Shown here in pieces: positions 3,993 to 54,923 of a stretch of DNA of 64,000 bases (position 1 is the first letter of the stretch; every line of letters starts with the position of its first letter). Origin of the DNA: Iphione sp. A-MEVVRFRX5 (Eukaryota); assembly GCA_976226885.1 (NCBI GenBank), contig OZ320322.1, positions 47,244,001-47,308,000 on the forward strand. The letters run 5' to 3'. The notes under the pieces were generated by a model that saw only the letters and a program-made list of their open reading frames with translations, did no database searches and was not told the DNA's origin. A program made the translations under genes and the position numbers.

Positions 3993-6900
3993 CTGCTCTC
4001 TCTGATTCTGTTTCTGAACTCCCTCTCGGACTGCCCATTCTGCTCCATGTATATTGCACCGGTCACTGTCAATGTGACATCGACCACGTGACAGGTACAC
4101 GTGATACCGGCCAGTGGAAGTGATTGTCTCTTCTGATCTCTGACCTGAACGTGTCTCCCTTCGCCCAGTTCACCTGTGACCATTAGCGCCACCCATCCAA
4201 CGAGGGACGAACTTTCATGAGATCAATTGCCCAGTTCCCCCCGCGTCATTTCTTGATAATATGTGGGACGACAGGAGAGTACATGTCCATGTCATACCTC
4301 AGGAATTCGGTTAACTTAAATCGATTTGGGATAATGCTGAATAATGTCACCCCCTCCCCAAATCACCATTTTCCCCGTTGGCTTCGTCGGACGGTCAAAA
4401 AGAGCTTCCTAGAGTATAGAGTTTCTTGAAAAGCAGTTACTAGCTACAGGGTGTAATAGTGCTGACAACCATATATAAACTTCAACATCAAAAGAGCTGG
4501 TCTGACATTAAATACCCCCTCAAGTGGCCGTTTCGCTAGTAATGAATTCATGGCCCGTAGCCTGTAGCGACAATCACATACACTCACAAGCAGCGCTCGA
4601 GTAAGGCGTTGCTCATTCAGATGGCCTTTTTTTTTATCTGCAATGCAGATGTAGTATATACTATATAATGTATAATGCGTGGGCCAAAGCTCGTCATAAT
4701 GACGCGATGTAATTCGATCGACATGCGGTAGGTCCTTATAGTTGATGGTCCATCTAGCCAGCCACTCTGACAGAGCAGTTCGTGAGATAATTGCAGGAAG
4801 ATCTAATGAGTCCGACCGAACCTGGACAGGAGAGAGTTGGTGGAATGCAGAGGACGGCTGGGAGTTTCTATAGAACACATAACGGATAAATAAATATAAA
4901 TATATGTACATTTATATAGATATATACATTCGCAGCTCTTACTGTCATCATAAGTGGTAATTATAGCGTTCACTTGCAACAAATGGCCACATGTGGGGTA
5001 TATATGTCTGTAGGGTGACCCGGCAATTTTTTTTTAGAATCGTACTGAACTATCAATGTATTCAAGAGAACTGACTTCATTTAATGGAAAAAAATAGGAA
5101 GGATGTATAGAGAAATATCTTAATGTGTGGGTAAATCCAAAGTATTCATGCGTTATCCTGGCTTAGTATGTAAAGATGGTGAGCATACTGGTATAGGTTC
5201 GGTTGCATTCATAAACGTAGCAGTCGTTTCCTGGGCTGCCGTCGTTTTTTTGTGTGGCGCTGGCGAGGGGCCCGCGGCTACCAAAGGGTGTCCGGTTTAA
5301 AAATACTCACCGTGTTTGAATCGGTCGCAGGCATTGAGTTGGGCTTGTTCGTCTGACAAAACACAGACATGTGACAGATGTCCAGGCGCAATTCCCCCGC
5401 TCAAATTAATCGATCGTGCCTGTCGTTGAACAACATGTGGGAATTTCGGCGTGGAGAGATTCCTTGCTGTCAGATCCTCCCCTTTACGTCGCCTTTATAA
5501 AAACAGACTTAGCTGCTCTGGAACATGAGAGCTGGCATTCGTGAGGTACCGGTTGTACTGATGATAAATGTCTTCTCCTGTGGGAGAATCGCTATGTTCT
5601 ATGCTTAATGCATGGAAGTGGCATTACTCTGAAAGTGTATATATTTACTCAGTTCTTATTTTCATGATATATGGGCAATTGGTACCCACAAAGTTAGACT
5701 GTACGAATATTTAATTGCATTTAACCAATGGTGGGATGGGAGTCCAGTCAGCATATTCATCAATCATTGAAAGCGGTTCATGTGGATGTAGCGTGTGTAA
5801 ATTATGAAGACACAAAATAAATGAGTCTACCACTGCAAAATTTATAACTTTGTGCAGTAACGTTATATTGTTCTTTTAGAGGAATTAGAATTCTCTGGCT
5901 CTGGTAGAACGTATCAACGCCAAAACTGCTAATTTTCCAACCAGCTAATACTTGTCTCTCTTGTCGTTGCCACAAACACCCATACGATGTATAGAGGGAC
6001 AAAACCATTATTGTAGAAATTTGATAGGGAAATTCTTTTTATCTCATGGGACTCTAGAATGATCCTTGTTTAGCATAGATGGGCCCTTCTCTTTCGAAAC
6101 AATATGAAATAAAACCTGCCTCCTTCCGGTGTCGTCCCTTCGAGTAACTGCTTTTGAGAGTTAATCTCTAAATTTGTTTTTCGTTTTTCCTATGTCTTTC
6201 AGATGGCTCCTTTGATATTACCTTCCATCTTGTCCTTATCTCTACCTTGTGTATGGAGATCTGGATGGAAGAAAACCCAGTCGGGCTTTATTTCCGTCTC
6301 GTCCTCTTCCTGCCTCTCCATTCATCTATCTTTGTCTTGGTGGCTCCCTCCCTTTCTGTCTGGTTAGATGAGTCATGTTTCCGAATGTCTCTAGATTTTT
6401 GTCAGCTCTGCTAAGAGTTTCGAGCCATTGCTGTCCTGGAAAGTTCTACTCTTTTCTAATAAAACTCCTCATGGGAAAATTAAGAGACTGTAGGAAGAAC
6501 TTATATCAAATCTGGCAATCCTGAAAAAGGGGATGTCCTTACCAATAGCACGTTTAATTCAACAAGAGAGAACAACTAAAGATGCCTTGTCAAAGACGCT
6601 CACTAGCGACCCTGTCCACTTGTCTATCTCCGCCAAATACGGTTTCATCCCACAGACTTCGCAGTAGACAGTCTCTAATGCGGGCAAAACCCGCTCATCT
6701 AATCTAACATTCTGTCACGTGGCATCATTAAAACCGCAGGCCAAGTTTAAAGTTGACATCAGATCCCTGTGCCATCGGCCCGGCTTGTTGCGGTGGTCTA
6801 TAGTGTCTGGTCTTAGCCTGATTGGGGCAATCAGGGGAGATCTCCACCTCGGAATAAAACCCACCACCACACATTGTCGTTGGCCGCCCGGCCGCCTCTG

Positions 6901-12605: not shown

Positions 12606-15353
12606 CCCCCCTCTGACGTCACGTCCCCGACTCACCGCCAGCAGAGACCTCTCCAATCGCCGACTCGCGGTAGTCACCATGGCAGCGGCAGTGGAAGTAG
12701 TGGCGCCCCCTCTAGGACACTTTCGCCCATAGCCGTCGAATCACGAGTTCGACCGGAAGCGGCGGTTGCTCTCCAAGCGAACGCACCCGTCCCTGCTTCG
12801 GTCGCTTCCGGCGTTTCTGCGGTGGAAATAACGCCGAAATATGAAACTAGTCCAACGGGTGTCAACACCACTACTGTTCAAGGTAAAGCGGCGACCTTGC
12901 CGCAGTCACCCACAAAACAGCACAGTGGACCGACTTCCCCGGAGAGAAGGTCACTCGCAACAGAAATAATATCGCCAGAGAAGTCTGTGTTGCGAAAGGA
13001 AGCTACAGAAAGAGCTCCAATCACGGGAGCTTCTTCATACAGGGCTCAAGTAAGAGAAGGAACTGCCGCTGGAAATGTGCCCAGAGGCCTGGATGCAAAG
13101 GGTGGTGCTGGTGTTGGTCCTGTGAGGGTTTCGGCTGGTGGGCAGCAGCGTGCTGGAATTTCGTCCCCAATTTCACCTTCAACAGAACAAGGCGCAGTCA
13201 AGTCAGGTGCGGTCAGCACTGTACCGCAAAGGTACTCCGCATCGACTGGATTGACACCATCACGGGTGGCGACGTCCAGCAGTGTAGGTGTCGATGGCGC
13301 AACAACATCATCCATTGTAACTACGAGGACTGTCACCTCCCCAACCACATCCCCAACTGGAAAAGCTGTCAAATCTCCTGTTTCTACCGTCACCACAACA
13401 CAGGCTGTACCACGCACAGTTGCCACACCCAGAGTTGTTACTTCCCCGACAGAGAAAAGGCAGCCCGTGGTATCTCCCCAGACTGTCACCACTAAGTCAG
13501 TAACAGTCAGTGCTGCAGCTGTAAGCCCAACCAGAACAGTGACATCACCAATACAGGTGTCAAGCTCAGTCATCTCAACAAAATCACCACTGACAACAGC
13601 AGCTCCAGCAACACAGCCTTCAAGTTCTATTGTTGCCAAAAAGCCAACATCGCCAAAAGCTGCAACAACAGCACCAATACTTATATCAAGCTCAAAAGTT
13701 ACAGCACAGCCAACATCACCAACAACTGTTGCAACATCATCAGTGCAAGTTTCAAGTTCTGTAGTTGCAAAAAAGGCTATATCACCCACAACAGGTACCA
13801 CAGCTCCAATACTTGTATCAAGCTCCCTAGTAACTTCAAAGCCAACATCACCAACAGCTGTAACAGCAGCACCAGTAAAGGTTTCAAGCTCTGTGGCTGT
13901 GAAAAAGCCAACTTCACCAACAGCAGTTACCACAGCACCTGTTCTTGCATCAAGTTCGATTGTGACACCAAAACCAATATCACCAACAGCTGCAACAACT
14001 TCACCAGTGCATGTGTCAAGTTCTGTGGCTGGAAAGAAACCAACATCACCAGCAGCAGTGACCACAGCACCAATACTTGTATCAAGCTCCATAGTAACTT
14101 CAAAGCCAACATCACCAACAGCTGCAACAAGTACACCAGTGCAGGTTTCAAGCACTGTGGTGGCAAAAAAGCCAACATCACCAACAACAGTTACCACAGC
14201 ACCTGTTCTTGCATCAAGCTCGGTGGTAAAAACTAAGCCGGTATCACCATCAGCTATAACCACTGCACCAATACAAATTTCAAGTGCTCTGGTTACAAAA
14301 AAGCCAACATCACCTACAGCAATAACAACATCACCAATATTGGTAACAAGCTCAGTCGTTACAACAAATTCCATCACATCTCCCACAGTATCGACAGCAC
14401 CACCAGTACAAGCATCCAGCGCTGTGAGCACCACAAAGCCAACATCACCTCCAGCCGTGACTTCTTCACCGATATCTATTTCAAGTTCCGTCGTCACTGC
14501 AAAAACTGTGACGTCAACCACTACCACGGTGGCATCTCCTACAACGGTTACTGCAGTGACATCACCAAAGACGCAATCTAAACCCGTTGAGAAGGCCACC
14601 CGAGACGTCAGTCGGACACCGGTGTTACAGATCCAACCGAGAGATGCACCCACGTCACCGACAGAGACGGTGGGGTCCCCTACCTCCCCGACAGTGAGGT
14701 CGGAGACTTTCATCACGCCTACCAAGCTTCCGACTTCACCGGTGCCAGAGGCGGTCAAGGGAGAGGCCGAGCCCCCACAAACACATGGGAAAACAGGGAG
14801 GGCTCCAACAACAGCCAGAACCACAGTAGATGTGCCCGTCTCTCCCACTGCTGTGTCAGCCCTGAAAGTACAGCCCACGAGTCCAACCAGAGAGAATCCA
14901 GCTGAAGTACCACCCTCCCCGTCGGAAGTCGATAATGCCGTGCAGGATCTAACTGCCACCCACATAGCCAAACCCACCGAGAAGCCTGCTGTTCAGAAAG
15001 CTGATACCCCAATACGACAATCCCAAGCAGTGGCTGGGAGCTTAAGTGAGAGACATGTACACACTTCAGCGGTAGAGATTAAACCCACGTCCCCAAAGAC
15101 CCAAGGGGCCGTCGACTTTACTAAGTATGGTATCCCCGAGAAGGTAGGCGAGCCCCTTGAACCCCTCAGACAGGTCACCAAGGAGCCACTCAAAGACGCC
15201 CCTAGCAGCGCTGCCTTAAGCAAGAAGCCGGACGCCCGGAAGGCCCGTTTCGGTAGTCAATATGGCCAGGCTCCCAAGATGGAGTTTGGCATGGTCTACA
15301 CGAAAAAGCCGGCTCCACCACAGCAAGTAGAGAAGCCCTCAAACGCACAAAAG
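12606..15353 (+). CDS. SVIL: Supervillin-like gene, giant 2748-nt S/T/P-rich exon (phase 0/0)
   Basis: Branch-like cactaac (12585-12591), then ccgtccgccttccag|. The frame is open from 12591 and contains track ORF 12822-15413. Donor CAAAAG|gtaaga at 15354. 916 codons. Confidence 0.8.
13638..14498 (+). repeat. Coding tandem repeat: about 13 copies of a 66-nt / 22-aa unit, consensus KKPTSPTAVTTAPILVSSSVVT
   Basis: Read directly from the translation: KKPTSPKAATTAPILISSSKVT, AQPTSPTTVATSSVQVSSSVVA, KKAISPTTGTTAPILVSSSLVT, SKPTSPTAVTAAPVKVSSSVAV, and so on. Confidence 0.9.
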
Positions 15354-15585
15354 GTAAGAATCACTGTAAACTGCATTTTTCTCTCTTATTTTCTCATACT
15401 TATTCGTATATAAACAACTGGTGACGCTTGAATCATATGGATCGCACTCATGACCAATGATCCACTGTGTCTGATGTATCCAGGAAGCTGTTTCCGTAGT
15501 TACTATATGCCAAACGACGCCGGATATAATTAGATCCAGAGGTGTTTCGGGGCAACTGGTGTCCATGTCCCGGAGGCATGAATCG

Positions 15586-38475: not shown

Positions 38476-40454
38476 GTAAACTTCCCTTGGATTTACCATA
38501 TGCATGTAATATCACAGTGTTTGATAAGCAGGAGAGCAGCTCAAATGGTATGTGTCAGTGATTCCACTCCCTAGGGTAATCCCATTGATTTGAACTGTGG
38601 ATAAAATGCAGTCAAATGTCAAACCTTCCGTGGTCTGAAGATATTCCCAACCGAATCATATTTTCAGCTAAATGGAGTGTGCCGTTGTCATACTTCGACT
38701 ATTTTTAGCAACCAGGCAATGGCGTAGTTGTGATGTATATGTATAAGACTGCATATATGACTGTATGTGTACGACTGGTGGTATGTTGCTGCCTATCTGC
38801 AATGACTTCGTGAGCTCCCTTCAGCACAGAATTGCCACAGCTATGATTTCATATGCGTCCAGAAGGAGATTTTTTTTCCTATTATTATTTTGTTGCCCCT
38901 AGGTAAACATTAGTTCATAAACTATCCACCTACAGGAGCCACTGGTATGTAACAACAGTATAACATATCCCCTTAGAAGAAAGGGTGAATGGAGAGACAT
39001 TATCCTCTGTATGGTGTGGGGGTGTTACTTGTAGCTAATGAAAAGTGGTTATTAGACACCATGCGTATGATTTATACTTGTTATTGGTTGGTGGGAGGTT
39101 ATGTAAGATATCAAGCAGCAGAATTTAGATGCGCCAGACACTCGACATGCCCTCGAAAGGCTCTGATCTATTCAGGGTCTAGTATTCATGTGTTTGATGA
39201 CATAATCGCTATAAACAAGGTCTATGGGTTTTATACGAAATGCATCCTTACACATACACATATGTAGAGTATTATTTATTCTTTATAATCAATTGTCGAT
39301 GTAGAATCATAGCTACGCCACTATAATTGTTATAAGGATATAGATGCATACAATAGTTTAACCAAAGATATATGCGTGTACATGTCGTACCAGTGTGTAG
39401 GATTTAGTCCGAGAGGTCCTCTGCTACTCAGACTCCATAGGCATTTCTCTCTTTCACACCGATGTCCACACATACGTAGAGACACACGCACATATACATG
39501 TATGGTGTATTTATACGGGAGTATAATACACTGGTTGACGGGGTCATATCAGTGGTCCCAGATAACACGTTAGCTAGGTTGCTATGATGCACCTATTATA
39601 TATGTGGTTATTTTCTGGTGTTGTGCACTTCTGTATTAGAGACCGCCACAACACTGCTAACACTGAGGACCGGGCTCCGACATGGCTTATTGTAAGCGAC
39701 CCTGATACACAGTATTTACATTAATTTTCTTTGTCATAGCCAGGTTTTAATACCTCCATTGGATTAGCATTTTGGTTTGTCGGTGTACACGTAAATACAT
39801 ATGTAACTTGTATTATTTAAGAGGCGATCTACGTTCGTTTGCGCCAAAGTAACGATTCCGTAGTATCTGAAACTTGTGTGTATACGATGTCTATATGTTC
39901 TTCAGAGGTCATCCGCATAGAAACTGTACTTTGTCATGATACATATTGAAATGTTTATGCATTGAAATAATCGTTGATTCTGACAATGGCGTCGATTTAT
40001 CATCTGAATAAGCAGAATAATTAGGTTTTTATGCGTGGATATAAATAAGCATGGCTACGATCTGTATGTGTTCCACTATGTATACATGAACGTGAATAAG
40101 AATCTCGTGCTGTAATGCAGTTCAGCGTTTCCCGACTGAAGGCCCGCATCGAGGCCCTTGAATGGGGGCGGGGTCTATTTTTAGGTTCAAGTGGAACTCG
40201 TCAATAAGTAATTTTTTTGCTCTATTGATATTTTTCCAAGTGTTGCTCTACTGATAGGTGGGATGGAATGTGTTCCACGAAGCGGGGTAGGGATACCAAT
40301 ACCTGTACTGCTGCCACGCAGACAACCATAACACTTTCATAGATAATTTCCCTTTCCTAGCTCACAAAGATGCTGTGCTACTTGGGGACCTGTTGATATC
40401 CATCATCAACATACATGTACATGTATATGTAAATGTCTCCGTTCTATTCTCCAG

Positions 40455-41133
40455 ACAAGTCTTCTGTTCGTGGAATCTTGAGGCCGGAACAGAAGGCGGA
40501 GCTGGAGAAGGAACTGCGTGGTATTCTCCGGGCGGCAGGGGCACCCTATCCCCTGGAGCCTTCCATCCCCTCGGTCCGGGCCGACCCGGTGGGGCCGGTC
40601 AGGCAGCCCCCGAGTATCCTCAAGAAGGAACAACCCACCCAGCAATTCGCCGACCAACCCCAGGCGAAGAGTATCTTAAAGAAGGACTCTGCGTTCGAGC
40701 AGGGACGGCCTGAACCCGAGAAGAGCGCACTCAAGAAGGAGAGCACGTTCGAGCCGCGGGTCACCGAGCCCGAGAGACCTAGCCTGAGAGCTGACGCGAG
40801 GTCGGCCAAGGTCGAAGAGAGCAAGAGCATCCTACGCAAAGAGGTGGCGTCCGCACCTGAGGTGCGCAGTGTCCTCAAGGTCAGCTCCGTCGAGGTCAGC
40901 AAGACGACCGAATCAACACGGGGCATCCTGAAGAGCCGAACGAACGTGGAGACCGAGGTGCACAGCATTCTCAAGCCGTCTGACCTTGACCAGGACCAGG
41001 TGCAGAGGTCAGGTCAGAGTCAAGCGAGCAGTACGGAGGACGACTCGTCGACGAGCGGCGGCGGCAAGAGGATTAAGAACGACGCTGTCGCTAGGCGGAG
41101 ACACCATCGTGAGCTGCGAAAACAAGGAGAAAG
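40455..41133 (+). CDS. SVIL: Supervillin-like exon with a SILK/GILK array (phase 1/2)
   Basis: Acceptor gttctattctccag|, donor GAAAG|gttagt. DKSSVRGILRP... compares with recalled human SPVRSILKS. Confidence 0.87.
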
Positions 41134-42935: not shown

Positions 42936-43074
42936 ATTGGGAATCCTGGCTTTAAAACATCACCTAAACCAAGCGCGGGAAACCTGCCACCCCTACCGCA
43001 GAAATGGCAGGTCACAAAAGCTGACCCAAATTATGTTCTTCCGGGTCACGTCAAAAGTGAGCGGCGGATTCAAA
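42936..43074 (+). promoter_or_regulatory. Candidate cell-cycle promoter upstream of exon 43736
   Basis: ATTGG (reverse CCAAT) at 42936, E2F-like GCGCGGGAAA at 42973-42982, and GGCGG followed by reverse CHR TTCAAA at 43063-43074. Confidence 0.4.
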
Positions 43075-43735
43075 CTGGTTTGTCAAAACAAAATGATCCG
43101 AACTGGTCGTCATTTTCTCAACAACGGCGTCGAATTTTACGTTAATAGAAACTTCGAGTGACAAACCCGCGCTGTATTACCAAGGAAATCTACACTCATT
43201 ATACAGGGAAGCACCACATGGACAGTTAACGTGTTTTGTAAGTAAATGTACTTGACCTTAGCCCGACTGACGTTGGGCAACGAGCGATCTGTCTCTCTGC
43301 CTAGTACAGGAATTTAAATCATATTTTGTCACCGGCACTTTTGCGTCGCGCTTGGTTGAGATGCTCCTTTGTATGGTTTAATATTTGCAACTGACGAACT
43401 GTTCTCGGGGTGATATGTTGCAGTCTTTTCATTCGCCCACAGTGCCAAGTGACAGTTACACGAGACGGTGTGCAATCAACCAGTGCGCAATTTCCATTTC
43501 CGATGGCCAGACTGTTTTAAAAGACCTGCACGTAGTGTGACTTTCCGTGCCAAGGCATGAACACTCTTAATCCAAGCTGTCACACTGTGGACTGAAATTA
43601 TCAACATTCAACTGTTCAAGTATTACGCCGTCTTTATATCAGTGTCATTTGAGTGTTCACTTACAAGCATTATAGTCAGCTACTCAGTCAATAATAGTCA
43701 CTGAGGTAGATTAGAATCGAAGATATATTTGAACA

Positions 43736-46227
43736 ATGAAGCGACGCAGTGTAGATATACAAACAACCAGCAACAAACGGCAGAAGCCGACAGAAAATAT
43801 GTCTGACCAGTCATCACCTGGCAGGAGCCAGACTTCTCGACGCACCCCTCTCAGACCCCTCTCCGCCTTGGATCACCTCACCCCGAACCCCGCGTACCAG
43901 CTCGGGGGCAAGTCGCCCCTCCGTGGGGGGATCCATGTGGGCCTGTCACCGGCCGTGAAATATGCCGACCGTTCGCCGCCGGAGAAACAAGCGCTGACCT
44001 TTGACCCGCAGCAAGAACAGGTGGAAGACGTCGGTATGAGGGCCAAGCCCCGCACCCGTAGAGCCGCCAGAGCAGCGGCCGCTTCTGCCACTTCCCCCGA
44101 GCCCGACGAAGAAAGCAGCGACATTGTGAAGCGGCTCAGAGCTAAGCTGAACGCCCGCAAGAAACGCGCTAAAGAGGCAGAGCAGCGGCAGGCAGAGGAC
44201 AAGGAATCCAGCGACGTTGGGACGTCTGGATCCACCGGATCCGGTTCCGGCGGATCTGAAGAGTTCAACCTGGGCGGTTCGAGCGAGGAGGACGCCGAGC
44301 TGAAGGCGGCCAAGACGGCGAGCGCCAAACGCCGCGTCCTCCTGCAGAGACGCAGCAAGTTCCGCATGAGCGTCGTGAAGCAGGTGGCGGAGGCGCGGAG
44401 GAAGTCGGGCCTGAGGAGCTCCCCCGAGGAGGAGGAGGAGGAGCCGGAGAATCTAAACAACGAGGCGGCGGCGGCGCAGCCGGCGGAGGGGGCCACTGAG
44501 ATGGATACAGAAGATCAGCCCGACGGTGACACACGCCAAACGACAACAGAGGGACGCCGCTGCAGCGAAAAAGTTGTCGGAAATAACGACGTTGACTTAG
44601 CGAGGCCGCATATGCCTAGGTCTAAGCGGGCGAGATCAAAGGCGAGTTCCTCCTCGGAGGATGACACCGCTGGCAGGAGCACAAGGTCGGGCCGCCCGCT
44701 TCCTAAGAGACTCATGAAGCGTCTGACAGCTGAGAAGGAGCCGGACACTGGAGGGAAGAGTCCGCCAGCAGACGGCGAAAATACTCCCGAAATAAAACCA
44801 GAACCAACAGAACAACGTGCTGGCGAGACGAGGGAAAAAGACATCGCGGGAACGCCCTCCTTAAAGAAAACTATATCTGTCACTGAGCTCACCGGTTCCG
44901 GATTGGTGTCGTCCATGAAGAGAGGGTTTGAAACTGGAGCTGCTCGTTTAAAAGAAGTTACCGGAGGAACATGCTCAGAGCCAGAGAAGACGCGTGATTC
45001 CGAATCAACGGTGGAAGTTGTTGAATTGAAAGTGCCCTCCTTGATGCCAGTCACTCCAGCTGAAAAGAGTCCGATGAAGACATCGTCGTCCGGTGTGGAG
45101 AATAAATCTTTCCGGGCCGAAATAACTCTGAATTTAGGGGTCGATGAGAGCCTATCCGAAATGGAAGCAACAAGCCCATCAAGGGAGATCACACATACAT
45201 GCGCGGTGAAGAGTTCTGAAGATCCGAGATCAGGAATAGTGAAGGAAATGTCCGGTTGTTTAATAGCGAGCAAATCCCTAGAATCTGACGGCCGAGGAGG
45301 TGAGCAGCTCGTACCAGCTGGAGACCTGAAGGAGGATTCGACTGTGAAAACAGGTCATTCTGAAGCAGCCACTGCACCAACACCTGCCACACCCTACTTG
45401 AAAGTTGAGGGGAATGCTACAGAAATGGATGATAGCACACAGAAAAGAATAGTGGCCGGTGGAGATATCAGTGTCAGCACTCCATTGCGACCTGCGGAAG
45501 AGCGGAGCAACAGGTATGGCCTTGGAGATGAGATTGGAGAAAGCACTCCCAAAGTGAAGGACATGTTGAAGGTGTTTTCTGCAACCAAGGGGAGTCAGTC
45601 TGACCGCAAGCCTCTTCGTCAGAGGCCACCAGATAAGGTGAGAAGACAGAGCCTCGAGGGAACCCCTACCATGAAGGAGATGATGAAGCGCTTCCACAAC
45701 AGCATACAGGCTACCTTCGGGAGTAAGCTGCTGGAGGAGTCCTCCCCGGAGGGACCAGAACCTGAGAGTAATGCCAGCACCAAAAGACCATTGACAAAAA
45801 CCACTGACCAGGCTGCTGACCACACAGCATCCGATTCCCTGGGCGGTCAGCGAGATGCGGCGTTAAGGACTGGTCAAGACCTGGTTCACGAGAAAGAATC
45901 AAGGGGGCAGCACCATGTTAATCTCCAGCAAGATGTTATATCCTCTCCCAAGAAGAAGACTCCCAGAGTGGACGAGGGTCTCTGCCCAGGAGATGGGGTC
46001 AGGGAGAAGCCGGCTAAGGTGTCCTTCTCCCCTTTTATTCTCACCCGGACCATTTCGCTCCGTCGGGCTGAGGACAACGAGAGCTTGAGTAGCCCCAGCG
46101 TCAGTGGGGAGAGTGTCGACGACGAAAGCTTTGAGCAGATGTTCACTCTTAATAAGGAGGTGCTCCAGGAGGAGGGTGAGGAGCAGGACGAAGAGGAGGC
46201 TATGGACATACAGGAGGAAGATGAAAG
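43736..46227 (+). CDS. Very large alternative first coding exon (about 830 aa, intrinsically disordered), or first exon of a separate nested gene
   Basis: ATG 43736 with an in-frame TGA 6 nt upstream; 834-codon ORF. Donor GAAAG|gtatgg at 46228 is phase 2, the same GAA AG ending as exon 40455-41133. No poly-pyrimidine acceptor at the 5' end. Confidence 0.72.
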
Positions 46228-49200
46228 GTATGGTCCCTAGTGTAGACACAGGTCTTACTGTTTGATTTTGAAGCCGTCCGTTCAGTGCAGTTTGCCTTTT
46301 TCACCGGCATAGTTGTTGACTTACTTTCCCTAGATGGTGTTTGATAGTGGATAAGAGCCCGTTTTCATTCGAAAGTTGATGAGTGCAATAATGGCAGCCA
46401 TTTTGCCCCAATGATTGGCATTTAAATACCCTAACGAAGAATGTGGCTCGATAAGTAAAGGTTAAAGTGAGGGCAGATCCCTAAATATAGCCTTCACACT
46501 GGAGGAATGGCTTGTAGGACCCACTTGGTCGGACACTGAGTAAAGTCTGTCTTAGCAGCAGCGACTAAGCAGGCTGCCCTCATAATTTTTATACACACTG
46601 AACCAAGTAAGCTGGTTTGGAGCCAAGCCCTTTTAACCGTTGACTATTGCCGGCAATCTTTCCGGTCTGCTGAGCACGGTAGCAAATCTGCAGCTCTGCC
46701 GGTGTATGTCGGTAGTCATGTGGGTTGGATCCGTTATGTGACATGCTCATATTGTTCCTTTGAAATCCATTAACATTTTATAAGTCACAGGCGCGATAGA
46801 AGTAACCGTTTCCTAAACATGGCCTTGGGGGTTATGCCAGTAGAATTAGTTTGTCTAAGGTCTTTCTGGTACGAATCTCCCTTCTCTCGAGAAGGAGGTG
46901 GTGGGAGGGGGGGGGAGCTAAAGAGAAAATTTTCTTTGCGTTGATCTTTAATGATGTGTACTCATGCTGCTTTGATATATACGACCATAATAATGTATTT
47001 CAGTTTATAATGTTTCTCTCTGTTCCTGTCGTATCTGACGGTCTCGTCTGGAGGCAAGTCGAATATCAGTAACTCTGCGTTTCTGTGTACTTTATACATG
47101 TATGTATAGCTCAAGTACATTTCCACTGTATTTTGTTTTATTTCTGTTGTTCTGTTTGCTCCATTTAGAGACGACTGTTGACATACACTCGATTTACCTC
47201 CAGGCTTTGCCTAATGTACATTGTCTGTAAACAGGGTTTGTTTTTGTTTACTTTTAGTATAGTGACTGATTGGGTTCTGGGAACAGCGTTCTCTTTGTAA
47301 TGTGGGTGCGATTATTTGAGCGTCAGTGTGTGCGAAGGTACGTCTTCGCTTGTCATCCTGTGTGCGTGCGTGTGTGTGCGTGGTCGTGACGAGGCACACC
47401 TGTCCCCGTTGGGGTGTGGGGGATCTCTACTTGACCTTGACTGTAAAGGTTGACCTCCGTAAGTGAGATATGATCTCACTGGATGACCTCAGCACAGAGT
47501 GAAACCTTGGGGGTCGGCGCTTTTGGTGTGACTGTGGTCGGGGGGGGGAGTTATTTTAAAACCTTATTCATACAAAATATTTTTTTAAAATATAGGATTN
47601 NNNNNNNNNNNNNNNNNNNNNNNNNNNNNNNNNNNNNNNNNNNNNNNNNNNNNNNNNNNNNNNNNNNNNNNNNNNNNNNNNNNNNNNNNNNNNNNNNNNN
47701 NNNNNNNNNNNNNNNNNNNNNNNNNNNNNNNNNNNNNNNNNNNNNNNNNNNNNNNNNNNNNNNNNNNNNNNNNNNNNNNNNNNNNNNNNNNNGTTTGCTG
47801 AATTGTATGTCACTTCCTCATACGGGTTCATGTGTTTATATGCATCGTGTCTTTTCATATATTGGTGATATCTCTTCACATCAAAAATAATAATCTTGAT
47901 CAATGATCTATGTTCGGCGAAAGATGAGTTTGTGGGCTCGTTATTCATCATTACTGATAATAACCACGAAGTGTCTCGGGATCTGCCACTTATCTTGTTT
48001 GGTGGGTTTCTTTCCTGATACAGTCTTTACCATCTATTCATTGTGTCCTGTTACTGTCAAGCCACTGGGCAGTTGGTCTGTTTGTCCTGGAACCAAAACC
48101 CGACATATCGTTCACTAGTCTGGCATTATTTCAGACTGCATGTACTGGTAATGTCTCAGTGGGTCTCATTGTTGCGTGTATATTTTGGAACAGTCCATCC
48201 TTCTGTCAGTTGTTTACTTGGCCATGTTTGCACATCGTTGTTCAAAATCGTGCGTTTTATTCGATCTCAGTATTCACAATCGTAACAGTTTTATCTCTGA
48301 ATCCTTAGCCATTCAGGGTTATTTCTAGGTACGAGAGTACCGTTCAACTAGCCCCTGAGTGAGTCATATGTTATAGCTACCTAAATACAACATAGACAAC
48401 CCCCCCCCCCCCTCCCCAGCCTCCACCTGTTCACGGTCTGCTCACACAGCTCGTTAGGAGACAGCTGTAATGGATATGGGGCTTGCTCTTTATCCTTTTT
48501 TTTTTTTTTTTTTTTAGCTGAATGTACCTGTCAACCCAGGTGTCAATGTCAGTGAACGAGACCTGTTGACACTCATCTCAGGGGCTCTTTTGTTTATATT
48601 GCTTCACAAAGAGTACAACGAGTACAAAGTTCAAGCACCACCAGACAATACACGTATCTTCTTACGTGTTTCATACTGTACGCGAGTTTTAGTAGGGTGG
48701 AGGGGGAGGGGGGGTTAAGTAGGGGAGGAGGGGTTTACGGTTGTCATGGCACGGGGAGATAGCTGTGTTTATTTGTGTGATATGTGTAATATGGAGTGTG
48801 TAATGTAGAGGTGTGATTGTGTGGTTTTCTGTGGTGGTGCGCGTCTACCCATGATTTTGCATATTGTATATATATGTATATATGTATATATATGTGCTTG
48901 AGTAGTACGTGTGTTAGAGAAGTATCATGAATGTCCTTGTTACGACAGATTGAAGCAACGTCAGAGTGTGTGTGTGTGGTGTGTGTGTTGTGTGTGTGTA
49001 TGTGTGTGTGTGTACATAGATGTGTGTCTCTCTGTATTTGTCCTAACATTTCCTTTGCCCTTCATTGTCTAGACTGATTTTGTCTGGAGCATGTTGACGC
49101 TGCTAAGCCGGAGCGTCTTGAACCACGAAATCTTCTTCCATCTAATCCGTCAGACTTCCTCAGTCATGACCTTTTTCAAGATGCTTTCACTGAACACCAA

Positions 49201-54301: not shown

Positions 54302-54555
54302 TCTGAGAAGTTCTCGCACTGTGATAGGAGACAGCTAGTCCGAGTCGAGGAGACTCTCGACTCCAACGTGTACTACTTAAGTAAGAGATCCTGGAAGTAC
54401 TGAATTATATACATACACTTGGAGAGGAGCCAATAATTCGAGACTTAAAAAACACCCGGCGACCCACGAGCGTAGAATTGACCTGTTCAGGTTCGTTGGC
54501 GGGAGGGTTTTCTCAGGACGTGTTAAGAAGTCGAATGTGATCCAGCTGGACCACA

Positions 54556-54923
54556 ATGAGCATGGAGTCGATGTACGGGGGCCGGGCGGGGGAAGGTCAG
54601 GTCCTCGGGCTTCACCCCGTCTCCCACCGGGGGCGGCCGGGCAGGGCGGCCGGAGGACACCGCCTCAGGACGGTCACTTACCCTGGAGGAGCAGCCGCCT
54701 TGCCTGCCATAGCTGAGGACTCGGTGGCCTCAGGGACCAGCACTGTTGAGGCTGTGGAGGAGGCTGGAGGAGATACAGGAGGAGGAGGGGCAGCAGCTGG
54801 AGCTGGTGAAGAGGTGAAGGCCAGGTCTAATAGTTTAGGTACACTGAGAGACATTCAAGGTTTCCGGCAGAAACAAGCGGTCAGCCAGAGGATCCAGCCA
54901 GAGGAAGGCCAAGTAGGGAGGCG
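54556..54923 (+). CDS. Candidate alternative first coding exon (about 122 aa, Gly/Ala/Glu-rich)
   Basis: ATG 54556 with an in-frame TGA at 54538. GC-rich ORF with RLRTVT and RSNSLGT kinase-like motifs, ending at a perfect donor AGGCG|gtaagt in phase 2, compatible with the other phase-2 ends. Confidence 0.55.

What the first reader, a model, noticed from the sequence alone, without database searches (positions are those of the whole stretch)
42936..46227. Candidate cell-cycle-regulated alternative N-terminus (about 830 aa) with CDK sites, NLS, D-box and RVxF
Seen: upstream reverse CCAAT, E2F-like GCGCGGGAAA and GGCGG-TTCAAA (CHR). A possible 5'UTR donor gtaagt lies at 43238. The exon encodes 7 full S/T-P-x-K/R sites (SPGR, TPLR, SPLR, SPMK, SPSR, TPLR, SPKK), basic clusters (KRRS, KRQK, RKKR, PKKK), an N-terminal RxxL (RTPL), three helices of the V/M-x-x-M-x-x-x-F type (VSSMKRGF, VKDMLKVF, MKEMMKRF) and KVSF (46016-46027) directly followed by SP. 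Established: E2F/CHR/NF-Y sites mark cell-cycle genes, RVxF docks PP1, and vertebrate supervillin acts in cytokinesis. Inference: an internal promoter swaps the whole SILK/TQPVT N-terminus for a mitotic or nuclear one, so the isoforms would carry mutually exclusive PP1 motifs (SILK arrays versus RVxF) on shared downstream exons. It could instead start a separate nested gene.
Basis: partly seen in the sequence, partly recalled or inferred. Interest (0 to 1): 0.72.

Follow-up and report, generated by a model that had tools for sequence, protein, structure and literature searches.

The report
Alternative N-terminal exon of supervillin-like gene
A conserved 830-codon exon with its own conserved promoter sits inside an intron of a supervillin-like actin-binding gene. 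It most likely gives that gene a second, disordered N-terminus carrying nuclear-import, degradation, CDK and phosphatase-docking motifs, but no transcript data were available to prove the splice.

Summary
Window 43736-46227 (+) is one open frame of 830 codons. It starts at an ATG two codons after an in-frame TGA and ends at a phase-2 donor, AAG|GTATGG.

- **Relatives:** only two exist in 5.8 and 1.84 billion proteins. Both are unannotated ORFs on invertebrate-type contigs, in the same place: 2-4.4 kb downstream of the SILK-array exon of a supervillin-like gene.
- **Conserved features:** the MKRRS start with upstream stops, the phase-2 MAG|GTA donor, a bipartite NLS, RTPLRPL (D-box-like), two CDK sites, KV[S/C]FSP (RVxF-type) and five predicted helices.
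- **Promoter:** an ETS-like site plus GGCG[G/C]-N1-5-TTCAAA (LIN54 CHR consensus TTYRAA) occurs once per locus, at the orthologous spot in all three species.
- **Downstream:** the next conserved exon, (R)YHTQPI…HTQPITS, starts ag|G in all three species and accepts phase 2. Every upstream donor yields Arg there. Gelsolin repeats and a villin headpiece follow.
- **Not tested:** no sequencing run was listed, so splicing, cell-cycle expression and PP1 binding remain untested.

Verdict: probably an alternative-promoter N-terminus of the supervillin-like gene (about 0.6). A nested gene is the main rival (about 0.2).

The parts
43030..43080 (+). Conserved core-promoter block: CTTCCGG (ETS-like) and GGTCAC, then GGCGG-A-TTCAAA (GC-rich CDE-like element plus a CHR matching TTYRAA)
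   Evidence: Three-species alignment. The composite GGCG[GC]-N1-5-TTYRAA occurs once in 94 kb of this locus (43063), once in L001 (9133) and once in L005 (9059), each at the orthologous place. The CHR consensus TTYRAA comes from PMC4974476.
42936..42982 (+). Reverse CCAAT (42936) and E2F-type GCGGGAAA (42975). Both are present here but not conserved in the other two species.
43081..43237 (+). Putative non-coding first exon (5'UTR), ending at the donor TTTT|GTAAGT. The start is not mapped.
   Evidence: Sequence. A GT donor lies 138-183 nt after the CHR in L001 and L005 too. This is inference only; there are no reads.
43238..43711 (+). Putative 5'UTR intron. Candidate acceptors lie about 24-30 nt before the ATG in all three species.
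   Evidence: Inference only.
43736..46227 (+). Coding exon of 830 codons plus 2 nt. It runs from the initiator ATG (MKRRS…) to the phase-2 donor AAG|GTATGG and is mostly disordered.
   Evidence: ORF. Stop TGA at 43730. Orthologous ORFs P0001 and P0002. Conserved start with upstream stops. Conserved donor. AlphaFold2: 701 of 830 residues have pLDDT below 50. Single copy in the genome.
43739..43786 (+). Bipartite-NLS-like KR-x10-KRQK (aa 2-17)
   Evidence: Alignment A2. KRRS…KRQK is conserved in L001; L005 has KRRS-x9-KRRK.
43841..43861 (+). RTPLRPL (aa 36-42): D-box-like RxxLxxL overlapping the CDK site TPLR
   Evidence: R, P, L, P and L are invariant in three species.
43913..43972 (+). SPLRGGIHVGLSPAVKYADR: the most conserved N-terminal block, containing the CDK site SPLR
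44108..44410 (+). Two long basic helices (aa 125-157 and 187-225) containing the invariant blocks DIVKRLRAKL and ELKAAxTASAxR…LQRxSKxRMSxVKxVA
   Evidence: AlphaFold2 pLDDT 80-96. Alignment A2.
44876..44932 (+). Invariant block SxxELxGSGLVSSxxxGFE (aa 381-399)
45545..45718 (+). Two repeated TP-x-x-K-x-[ML]-x-K-x-F helices (TPKVKDMLKVF and LEGTPTMKEMMKRF), with RRQSLE between them
46016..46033 (+). KVSFSP: an RVxF-type PP1-docking candidate followed at once by an SP site
   Evidence: KVSF, KVSF and KVCF in the three species.
46228..46233 (+). Splice donor GTATGG. The read-through frame stops 4 codons later.
40433..41133 (+). Upstream SILK-array exon of the host gene. Its donor GAAAG|GTTAGT is also phase 2.
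   Evidence: Orthologues lie upstream of the ORF in L001 and L005.
54556..54923 (+). Third 5' module (ATG 54556, donor CG|GTAAGT, phase 2). It may be an alternative first exon or a cassette; this is unresolved.
   Evidence: The L001 orthologue shares RTVTYPG and a phase-2 AG|GTAGGT donor.

Best explanation
The 830-codon exon is most likely the first coding exon of an alternative transcript of a supervillin-like gene. That host gene has a long disordered N-terminus, gelsolin repeats and a villin headpiece.

**Proposed mechanism**
- Transcription starts at an intronic promoter about 0.65 kb upstream, marked by a conserved ETS-like site and a GC-element/CHR (TTCAAA) pair.
- A short 5'UTR exon is probably spliced to just before the ATG.
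- The coding exon's phase-2 donor at 46227 then joins the conserved phase-2 acceptor exon '(R)YHTQPIEG…HTQPITSIE'. This exon lies 19 kb downstream, outside the window, at G000:C22:47309280-47309477. The SILK-array exon (donor at 41133) is predicted to join the same acceptor.
- The product would replace the long SILK/TQPVT N-terminus with a mostly disordered head, placed on the shared actin-binding body.

**What the new head carries**
- A bipartite NLS.
- A D-box-like RTPLRPL.
- Clustered CDK-consensus sites.
- Two basic helices and two TPxxKxMxKxF helices.
- A KVSFSP RVxF-type motif.

This is anillin-like regulatory logic: nuclear in interphase, and controlled by CDK, PP1 and APC/C in mitosis.

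**Shown:** the exon, its start, its donor, the conservation, the synteny, the promoter footprint and the phase compatibility.

**Inferred:** the splice partner, the transcription start, cell-cycle regulation, nuclear import, degradation and PP1 docking.
For: **The exon is real and begins the coding region**
- The open frame is 2.5 kb.
- The only relatives are two ORFs: E 9e-65 and 5e-33 by word search, and 2.9e-65 and 1.5e-33 in the exhaustive search.
- All three start MKRRS directly after stop codons.
- The exon is single copy in this genome.

**The donor is conserved**
- The donors are AAG|GTATGG, AAG|GTACTT and CAG|GTAGGC. All are phase 2, and a stop follows 0-4 codons later in the read-through frame.

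**Position and strand inside the host gene are conserved**
- In both other species the orthologues of window exons 38.2 kb and 40.4-41.1 kb lie 1.9-4.4 kb upstream on the same strand.

**The shared acceptor is conserved**
- The next exon conserved in all three species starts ag|G TAC CAC and exits AG|GT in phase 2.
- Apart from the 54.5 kb exon, which has an orthologue in L001, no other conserved coding segment lies between the ORF and this acceptor at 30 bits or more.
- All eight donors examined end AG| or CG|, so with the acceptor's G each gives Arg before YHTQPI. These are the SILK exon in three species, the ORF exon in three species and the 54.5 kb exon in two. Two of them are the non-consensus CG|.

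**The host gene is villin-superfamily**
- Villin headpiece at 47.9 bits, and three gelsolin hits just under the cut-off.
- PDB gelsolin match at E 7.7e-10.
- VHP located by genome search at C22:47334518.

**The promoter block is conserved**
- TTCAAA fits the LIN54 consensus TTYRAA (PMC4974476).

**Weak evidence against termination after the exon**
- No AATAAA or ATTAAA occurs within 3 kb after the ORF stop in this genome.

**Motifs and structure**
- Motif enrichment and conservation.
- Disorder plus conserved helices.
Against: - There is no transcript evidence. No RNA or DNA run was listed for this sequence, so neither the transcription start nor any splice junction has been seen.
- No annotated protein in the databases joins this N-terminus to a gelsolin/headpiece body.
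- Phase compatibility alone has a one-in-three chance.
- The ORF exon's donors all end in the consensus AG, so the 'always Arg' argument is weakest for this exon.
- The promoter pattern was defined after seeing the alignment.
- The CDE-like element is 1-3 nt from the CHR rather than 4 nt.
- The CCAAT and E2F sites are not conserved.
- [ST]P enrichment is common in disordered regions and is not specific to CDKs.
- Calling the upstream exons supervillin N-terminus rests on motif similarity (TQPVT, SILK) to vertebrate supervillin recalled from memory, not on a tool result. Pfam has nothing for them.
Confidence: 0.6

Rival explanations
1. The exon belongs to an independent gene nested on the same strand in the supervillin-like intron. 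It would have its own promoter, and would either splice to private small or non-conserved downstream exons or end after the exon.
For: - It has its own conserved promoter and initiator ATG.
- No database protein links it to a gelsolin/headpiece body.
- The read-through frame ends within 4 codons in all three species, which would also fit a real C-terminus.
- AATAAA or ATTAAA occur 276-676 nt after the stop in L005 and L001.
Against: - The MAG|GTA donor in phase 2 is conserved exactly at the ORF end in three divergent species.
- Apart from the 54.5 kb exon, no conserved private exon was found in the roughly 19 kb downstream.
- This genome has no poly(A) signal within 3 kb.
- Same-strand position inside the same intron is kept in all three species.
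- The phase matches the conserved acceptor.
Confidence: 0.2
2. The exon is the true and only N-terminus of the villin-like gene. On this reading, the upstream SILK/TQPVT exons belong to a different upstream gene.
For: There is no transcript evidence linking the upstream exons to the gelsolin/headpiece part. Pfam gives nothing for the upstream exons.
Against: - The SILK exon ends in a conserved phase-2 donor in three species, so it must splice onward.
- In L005 only about 0.9 kb separates that donor from the promoter block, and no conserved exon lies between them.
- The acceptor exon carries the same TQPIT-type motif as the upstream exons.
- The CG| donor in L005 keeps Arg at the junction.
Confidence: 0.08
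3. The exon is an internal cassette of the long isoform, not a first coding exon.
For: It lies between two exons of the host gene on the same strand, and it exits in the same phase as its upstream neighbour.
Against: - An in-frame TGA sits two codons before the ATG, and stops precede the ATG in L001 as well.
- Conservation starts at M1 (MKRRS) in all three species.
- A phase-2 entry at the candidate acceptors before the ATG runs into a stop (read).
Confidence: 0.04
4. The frame is a chance ORF, a transposon remnant or a pseudogene.
For: It has no Pfam family and only two database relatives.
Against: - The frame stays open for 773-830 codons in three species at 33-40% identity, with invariant blocks.
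- It is single copy.
- Synteny is conserved.
Confidence: 0.02

Closest known systems
Vertebrate supervillin (SVIL) and its splice forms SV1-SV5, including archvillin
   Same: - A villin-superfamily body of gelsolin repeats plus a headpiece, behind a long intrinsically disordered N-terminus.
- The vertebrate N-terminus is also about 830 residues and binds myosin II and F-actin (cited in PMC6192639).
- Vertebrate supervillin acts in cytokinesis together with anillin (PMC3842989).
   Different: - Known vertebrate isoforms arise by differential splicing of internal coding exons and share their N-terminal sequences (PMC6192639). Here a whole different N-terminus would come from an internal promoter.
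- The 830-aa exon has no detectable sequence relative outside three invertebrate-type assemblies.
Anillin
   Same: Regulatory logic only: a disordered N-terminus with an NLS, a D-box-type degron and CDK sites, placed in front of a cortical or actin-associated module. This comparison rests on general knowledge.
   Different: There is no anillin-homology domain and no PH domain. Pfam finds nothing in the exon, and the PF08174 matches in this genome lie on other contigs, C15 and C17. The exon is not a family member.
CDE/CHR (DREAM / MuvB-B-Myb-FoxM1) promoters of G2/M genes such as cyclin B, CDK1 and CDC25C
   Same: - TTCAAA fits the LIN54 consensus TTYRAA (PMC4974476).
- A GC-rich element lies directly upstream of it.
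- The pair is conserved in three species and sits about 140-180 nt before a candidate first donor.
   Different: - The spacing is 1-3 nt rather than the canonical 4 nt.
- The GC element matches SGCGCS only in L001.
- There are no conserved CCAAT boxes.
- Neither binding nor cell-cycle expression was tested.
PP1-interacting proteins with RVxF docking motifs next to mitotic phosphosites (KNL1, Ki-67 and RepoMan type)
   Same: K-V-[S/C]-F lies in a disordered region, is conserved in three species and is followed at once by an S-P site.
   Different: - Only the short motif is shared.
- No SILK motif precedes it in this exon.
- The flanks do not match the Ki-67/RepoMan extended motif.
- No binding test was done.

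Membership tests
Supervillin-type villin-superfamily gene (host gene) | C-terminal villin headpiece | tested here: met
   PF02209 at 47.9 bits (cut-off 27) on L004:6326-6607. Also found by genome search at C22:47334518-47334607 (+), with PDB villin headpiece hits.
Supervillin-type villin-superfamily gene (host gene) | Gelsolin-type repeats before the headpiece | tested here: met
   Three exon ORFs hit PF00626 at 19.4-20.8 bits, just under the 21-bit cut-off. One of them matches gelsolin G4-G5 in the PDB at E 7.7e-10.
Supervillin-type villin-superfamily gene (host gene) | Long disordered N-terminal extension encoded upstream on the same strand and spliced to the gelsolin core | tested here: inconclusive
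   Large same-strand coding exons lie at 12.8-41.1 kb and have conserved donors. The TQPVT/SILK similarity to vertebrate supervillin is from memory. No transcript was available.
CDE/CHR cell-cycle promoters | CHR element TTYRAA near the transcription start | tested here: met
   TTCAAA at 43069 is conserved in L001 (9142) and L005 (9068-9069) within an aligned block. The consensus is from PMC4974476. The transcription start itself is not mapped.
CDE/CHR cell-cycle promoters | CDE (SGCGCS) four nucleotides upstream of the CHR | tested here: inconclusive
   A GC-rich element is present in all three species, but at 1-3 nt spacing. SGCGCS is matched exactly only in L001.
CDE/CHR cell-cycle promoters | CCAAT boxes (NF-Y) upstream | tested here: not met
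   This genome has one reverse CCAAT, 132 nt upstream of the CHR. L001 and L005 have none within 400 nt upstream.
CDE/CHR cell-cycle promoters | G2/M-peaking expression and DREAM/MuvB binding | not testable with these tools
   No sequencing run was listed.
RVxF-type PP1 interactors | [KR]-x(0,1)-[VI]-{P}-[FW] in a disordered, accessible region | tested here: met
   KVSF at aa 761-764, with KVSF and KVCF in the orthologues. pLDDT is below 50 there.
RVxF-type PP1 interactors | Physical binding to the PP1 catalytic subunit | not tested
   No complex prediction was run, because no usable PP1 sequence was in hand and the claim is only an inference.
APC/C D-box substrates | RxxLxx[LIVM] core in a disordered region | tested here: met
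   RTPLRPL at aa 36-42. R, L and L are invariant in three species.
APC/C D-box substrates | APC/C-dependent degradation | not testable with these tools
   This needs an experiment.
Anillin | Anillin-homology domain (PF08174) followed by a PH domain | tested here: not met
   The exon has no Pfam hit. The PF08174 matches in the genome are on C15 and C17 only.

The most novel reading that the evidence does not exclude
In one invertebrate lineage, supervillin may have gained an internal CHR-controlled promoter and a new 830-residue head. That head would make a mitosis-specific isoform: held in the nucleus in interphase by a bipartite NLS, switched by CDK phosphorylation and PP1 docking at KVSFSP, and removed by APC/C through RTPLRPL. 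In effect, anillin-like regulatory logic would be grafted onto supervillin's actin-binding body, while the long SILK-array isoform serves non-dividing cells.
Probability: 0.25. Interest if true: 0.65.

Novelty: new variant of a known kind. Interest (0 to 1): 0.5.

Why it matters
Supervillin is known in vertebrates as a membrane-actin-myosin scaffold needed for cytokinesis. Its known isoforms differ only by internal exons.

A whole alternative N-terminus driven by a conserved intronic promoter would show a different way to retarget the same actin-binding body, for example to the nucleus and the mitotic cortex. It would also give a compact, testable set of short linear motifs (NLS, D-box, CDK sites, RVxF) that have stayed fixed while the rest of the exon diverged to about 35% identity.

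The case also shows that alternative first exons can be inferred without RNA data. The inference here used three things compared across three species:
- conserved donors;
- one shared acceptor;
- the amino acid formed at the split codon.

Tried and rejected
- **Read evidence.** Two run searches (rna on 43000-46400; any on the exon) listed nothing.
- **Family scans.** Pfam on the exon gave nothing. Pfam on seven other N-terminal exons gave nothing meaningful.
- **Protein searches.** The word search, the exhaustive HMMER search and the profile word search returned only the same two unannotated ORFs. No annotated full-length isoform could be found.
- **ESM Atlas.** On the exon it gave only weak look-alikes among disordered proteins (0.78; KNL1, BRCA1 fragments), which is uninformative. 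On the 38.1 kb exon it gave noise (NmrA-like).
- **Anillin idea.** Rejected, because the PF08174 matches lie elsewhere in the genome.
- **Shared DIVKRLRAKL-type motif.** I tested whether this motif, resembling 'RIARYKA', recurs in all N-terminal modules. Only one match was found in 94 kb, so the idea was dropped, although the L001 orthologue of the 54.5 kb exon has DRIARYKADK.
- **Contig walking.** Two look-ups failed because I trimmed the wrong end of minus-strand ORFs. One look-up hit a repeat and returned unrelated contigs.
- **Conservation of E2F and CCAAT.** Not found.
- **Complex prediction with PP1.** Not attempted.
- **Organism.** The taxon of this genome and of the two ENA assemblies could not be determined with the tools.
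Full report
**Observation**

Window 43736-46240 (+) is a single open frame of 834 codons.
- An in-frame TGA lies two codons before the ATG.
- The frame ends GAA GAT GAA AG|GTATGG, with a stop four codons into the read-through.
- Up to the donor the exon is 2492 nt, so it exits in phase 2.
- The seven full [ST]P.[KR] sites exceed the 1.7 expected from composition-preserving shuffles (P about 0.001). [ST]P dipeptides are about twice as frequent as expected in this exon and in both orthologues.
- The number of RxxL motifs and the single RVxF are not above chance by count.

**Is it a gene part?**

Pfam finds nothing in the exon. The word-indexed search of 5.8 billion proteins, the exhaustive HMMER search of 1.84 billion representatives and a profile search all return the same two relatives. 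These are P0001 and P0002, unannotated ORFs on long contigs of two ENA assemblies.

The three proteins align over their whole length at 33-40% identity, with invariant blocks:
- M-K-R-R-S at the start;
- SKRQKP;
- R-[T/S]-P-L-x-P-L;
- P-[L/A]-R-G-I-x-x-G-L-S-P-A-V-K-x-A-D;
- DIVKRLRAKL;
- E-L-K-A-A-x-T-A-S-A-x-R…L-Q-R-x-S-K-x-R-M-S-x-V-K-x-V-A;
- E-L-x-G-S-G-L-V-S-S-x-x-x-G-F-E;
- F-R-x-E-x-T;
- T-P-x-x-[K/R]-D-x-L-K-V-F;
- L-R-R-x-S-L-E-x-T-P-x-x-K-x-x-x-K-x-F;
- K-V-[S/C]-F-S-P.

In L001 the ORF as called began at a later Met. The frame in fact opens MKRRSVD directly after stop codons, as it does here. The exon is single copy in this genome. It is therefore a real first coding exon under selection, not a chance frame or a repeat.

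AlphaFold2 with the three-sequence alignment predicts disorder for 701 of 830 residues. It predicts helices at 125-157 and 187-225 (pLDDT 80-96), 607-615, 646-661 and 796-808.

**Where it sits**

The window is G000:C22:47244001-47308000.
- *Upstream exons.* Upstream on the same strand lie large disordered exons, including the SILK/GILK-array exon 40433-41133.
- *Gelsolin and headpiece.* Downstream, at 76-90.6 kb from the window start, exon-sized ORFs hit the gelsolin repeat three times just under Pfam's cut-off. One matches gelsolin G4-G5 in the PDB at E 7.7e-10. The last ORF is a villin headpiece at 47.9 bits.
- *Other villin-type loci.* The genome's other three headpiece loci go with strong gelsolin hits elsewhere.
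- *Host gene identity.* The host is thus a villin-superfamily gene with a very long N-terminal extension, which is supervillin-type architecture. The TQPVT and SILK motifs of the upstream exons resemble vertebrate supervillin as I recall it. That last point rests on memory, not on a tool result.
- *Synteny.* In both other species the orthologues of window exons 38.2 kb and 40.4-41.1 kb lie 1.9-4.4 kb upstream of the orthologous ORF, on the same strand. The position inside this intron is therefore conserved.

**Donor, acceptor and phase**

All three ORFs end in a MAG|GTA donor at the same aligned position and in phase 2. The donors are AAG|GTATGG, AAG|GTACTT and CAG|GTAGGC, and a stop follows within 0-4 codons of read-through.

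I walked the two foreign contigs downstream and found the next exon conserved in all three species.
- It lies at own 65280-65477 (L002:1280-1477), at L009:16067-16229 and on L011 minus strand 4849-4668.
- It encodes (R)YH[T/S]QPI…HTQPITS[I/F]E.
- It starts ag|G TAC CAC and exits AG|GT, so it is phase 2 in and phase 2 out.
- Further conserved exons follow at own 68.7 and 69.4 kb.

Between the ORF and this acceptor the only other conserved coding segment is the 54.5 kb exon. It has an orthologue in L001 (RTVTYPG, phase-2 donor).

The SILK exon also exits in phase 2: GAAAG|GT in this genome and L001, and GAACG|GT in L005. All eight donors examined end AG| or CG|, so each forms an Arg codon with the acceptor's first G. 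Two of them use the non-consensus CG|, which still keeps Arg. This suggests that R-Y-H-T-Q-P is selected whichever 5' module is used, and hence that these donors share this acceptor. For the ORF exon itself the donors are all consensus AG, so for that exon the argument shows consistency, not proof.

In this genome no AATAAA or ATTAAA lies within 3 kb after the ORF stop.

**Promoter**

One conserved block appears: CTTCC[G/T]G and GGTCAC, then GGCG[G/C] followed 1-3 nt later by TTCAAA.
- The composite GGCG[GC]-N1-5-TTYRAA occurs exactly once on both strands of 94 kb here (43063), once in 22 kb of L001 (9133) and once in 22 kb of L005 (9059). Each occurrence is at the orthologous place, 670-940 nt before the ATG. 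The pattern was defined after seeing the alignment, so its uniqueness is descriptive, not a clean test.
- TTCAAA fits the biochemically defined LIN54 consensus TTYRAA for the CHR (PMC4974476).
- A candidate GT donor follows 138-183 nt later in each species (here gtaagt at 43238). A candidate acceptor lies 24-30 nt before each ATG. This suggests a short 5'UTR exon and intron.
The GC element is not at the canonical 4-nt spacing.

**Motifs**

Conserved in all three species:
- a bipartite-NLS-like KR-x9-10-K[R]xK at residues 2-17;
- RTPLRPL (RxxLxxL, D-box-like) overlapping TPLR;
- SPLR at residue 60;
- the SP/TP at residue 737;
- KV[S/C]F followed by SP.

Five of the seven full CDK sites are specific to this species.

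**Interpretation**

The best reading (about 0.6) is an alternative-promoter first coding exon that gives the supervillin-like gene a second N-terminus. The proposed mechanism is nuclear import, CDK/PP1 switching, APC/C turnover and CHR-controlled G2/M transcription. It is inferred from short motifs and their conservation only.

The main rival is an independent same-strand nested gene (about 0.2). It is disfavoured by the conserved in-phase donor, by the lack of any private conserved exon and by the missing poly(A) signal. It is not excluded.

Smaller rivals:
- The upstream exons belong to another gene (about 0.08).
- The exon is an internal cassette (about 0.04). This is contradicted by the stop before the ATG.
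- The exon is a chance or transposon ORF (about 0.02).

**Comparison with the known**

Vertebrate supervillin isoforms SV1-SV5 differ by internal exons and share their N-terminal sequences (PMC6192639). Supervillin works with anillin in cytokinesis (PMC3842989). I found no description of an internal-promoter N-terminus in the searched library.

The exon is not anillin, because it has no anillin-homology domain. It only resembles anillin's regulatory logic.

**Limits**

- No sequencing run was listed, so splicing and expression are untested.
- The taxon is unknown.
- The status of the 54.5 kb exon is unresolved. It could be a first exon or a phase-2 cassette. An in-phase AG lies just before its ATG in both species.

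Noticed in passing
window 54546-54923; orthologue L009:3104-3775 (= L001:21844-22515): A third 5' module has a phase-2 donor (CG|GTAAGT here, AG|GTAGGT in L001) and a shared RTVTYPG motif. The L001 copy also carries DRIARYKADK. An in-phase AG lies a few codons before the ATG in both species, so it could be a 378-nt phase-2/phase-2 cassette rather than a first exon.
   Followed up: partly
window 12822-15413 (+): An 863-codon open frame is made of about 25-residue Ser/Thr/Pro/Val-rich repeats (…KPTSPTAVTTAPILVSSSIVT…), mucin- or PEVK-like, on the same strand as the supervillin-like exons. I did not check whether it belongs to the same gene.
   Followed up: no
L002:1280-1477 (G000:C22:47309280-47309477), outside the window: The shared acceptor exon carries two TQPI motifs (RYHTQPIE and HLTQPITSIE). 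It is conserved in three species at 52-86% identity. All upstream donors form an Arg codon at its first base.
   Followed up: yes
own 68736-68927 and 69397-69471 (L002:4736-4927 and 5397-5471): Two further exons are strongly conserved between this genome and the L005 species (66% and 92% identity): …KERPTSIADRLSLLQ…DVRQFTVAGKLE… and AGKAMTPDSPLLARKRKPKVPLARG. They probably belong to the constant middle part of the gene.
   Followed up: no
window 43873-45823 (-): Long minus-strand ORFs (207, 252 and 181 aa) lie opposite the exon. They look like by-products of the purine-rich, GC-rich coding strand (GC 0.56, AT skew 0.30 in 44-46 kb), not genes.
   Followed up: no
G000:C22:34875920-34897369, C22:50178855, C1:112324717-112337088: Three other villin-headpiece loci exist. 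Two of them have gelsolin repeats above the Pfam cut-off nearby, and they are presumably the ordinary villin/advillin-type genes of this genome.
   Followed up: no
L008:1-3686: An LTR-retrotransposon-type pol ORF (RT_RNaseH, integrase) and a Baculo_F-like env ORF lie on an unrelated contig of the L005 species. It was reached only because the ORF used for walking was a repeat.
   Followed up: no
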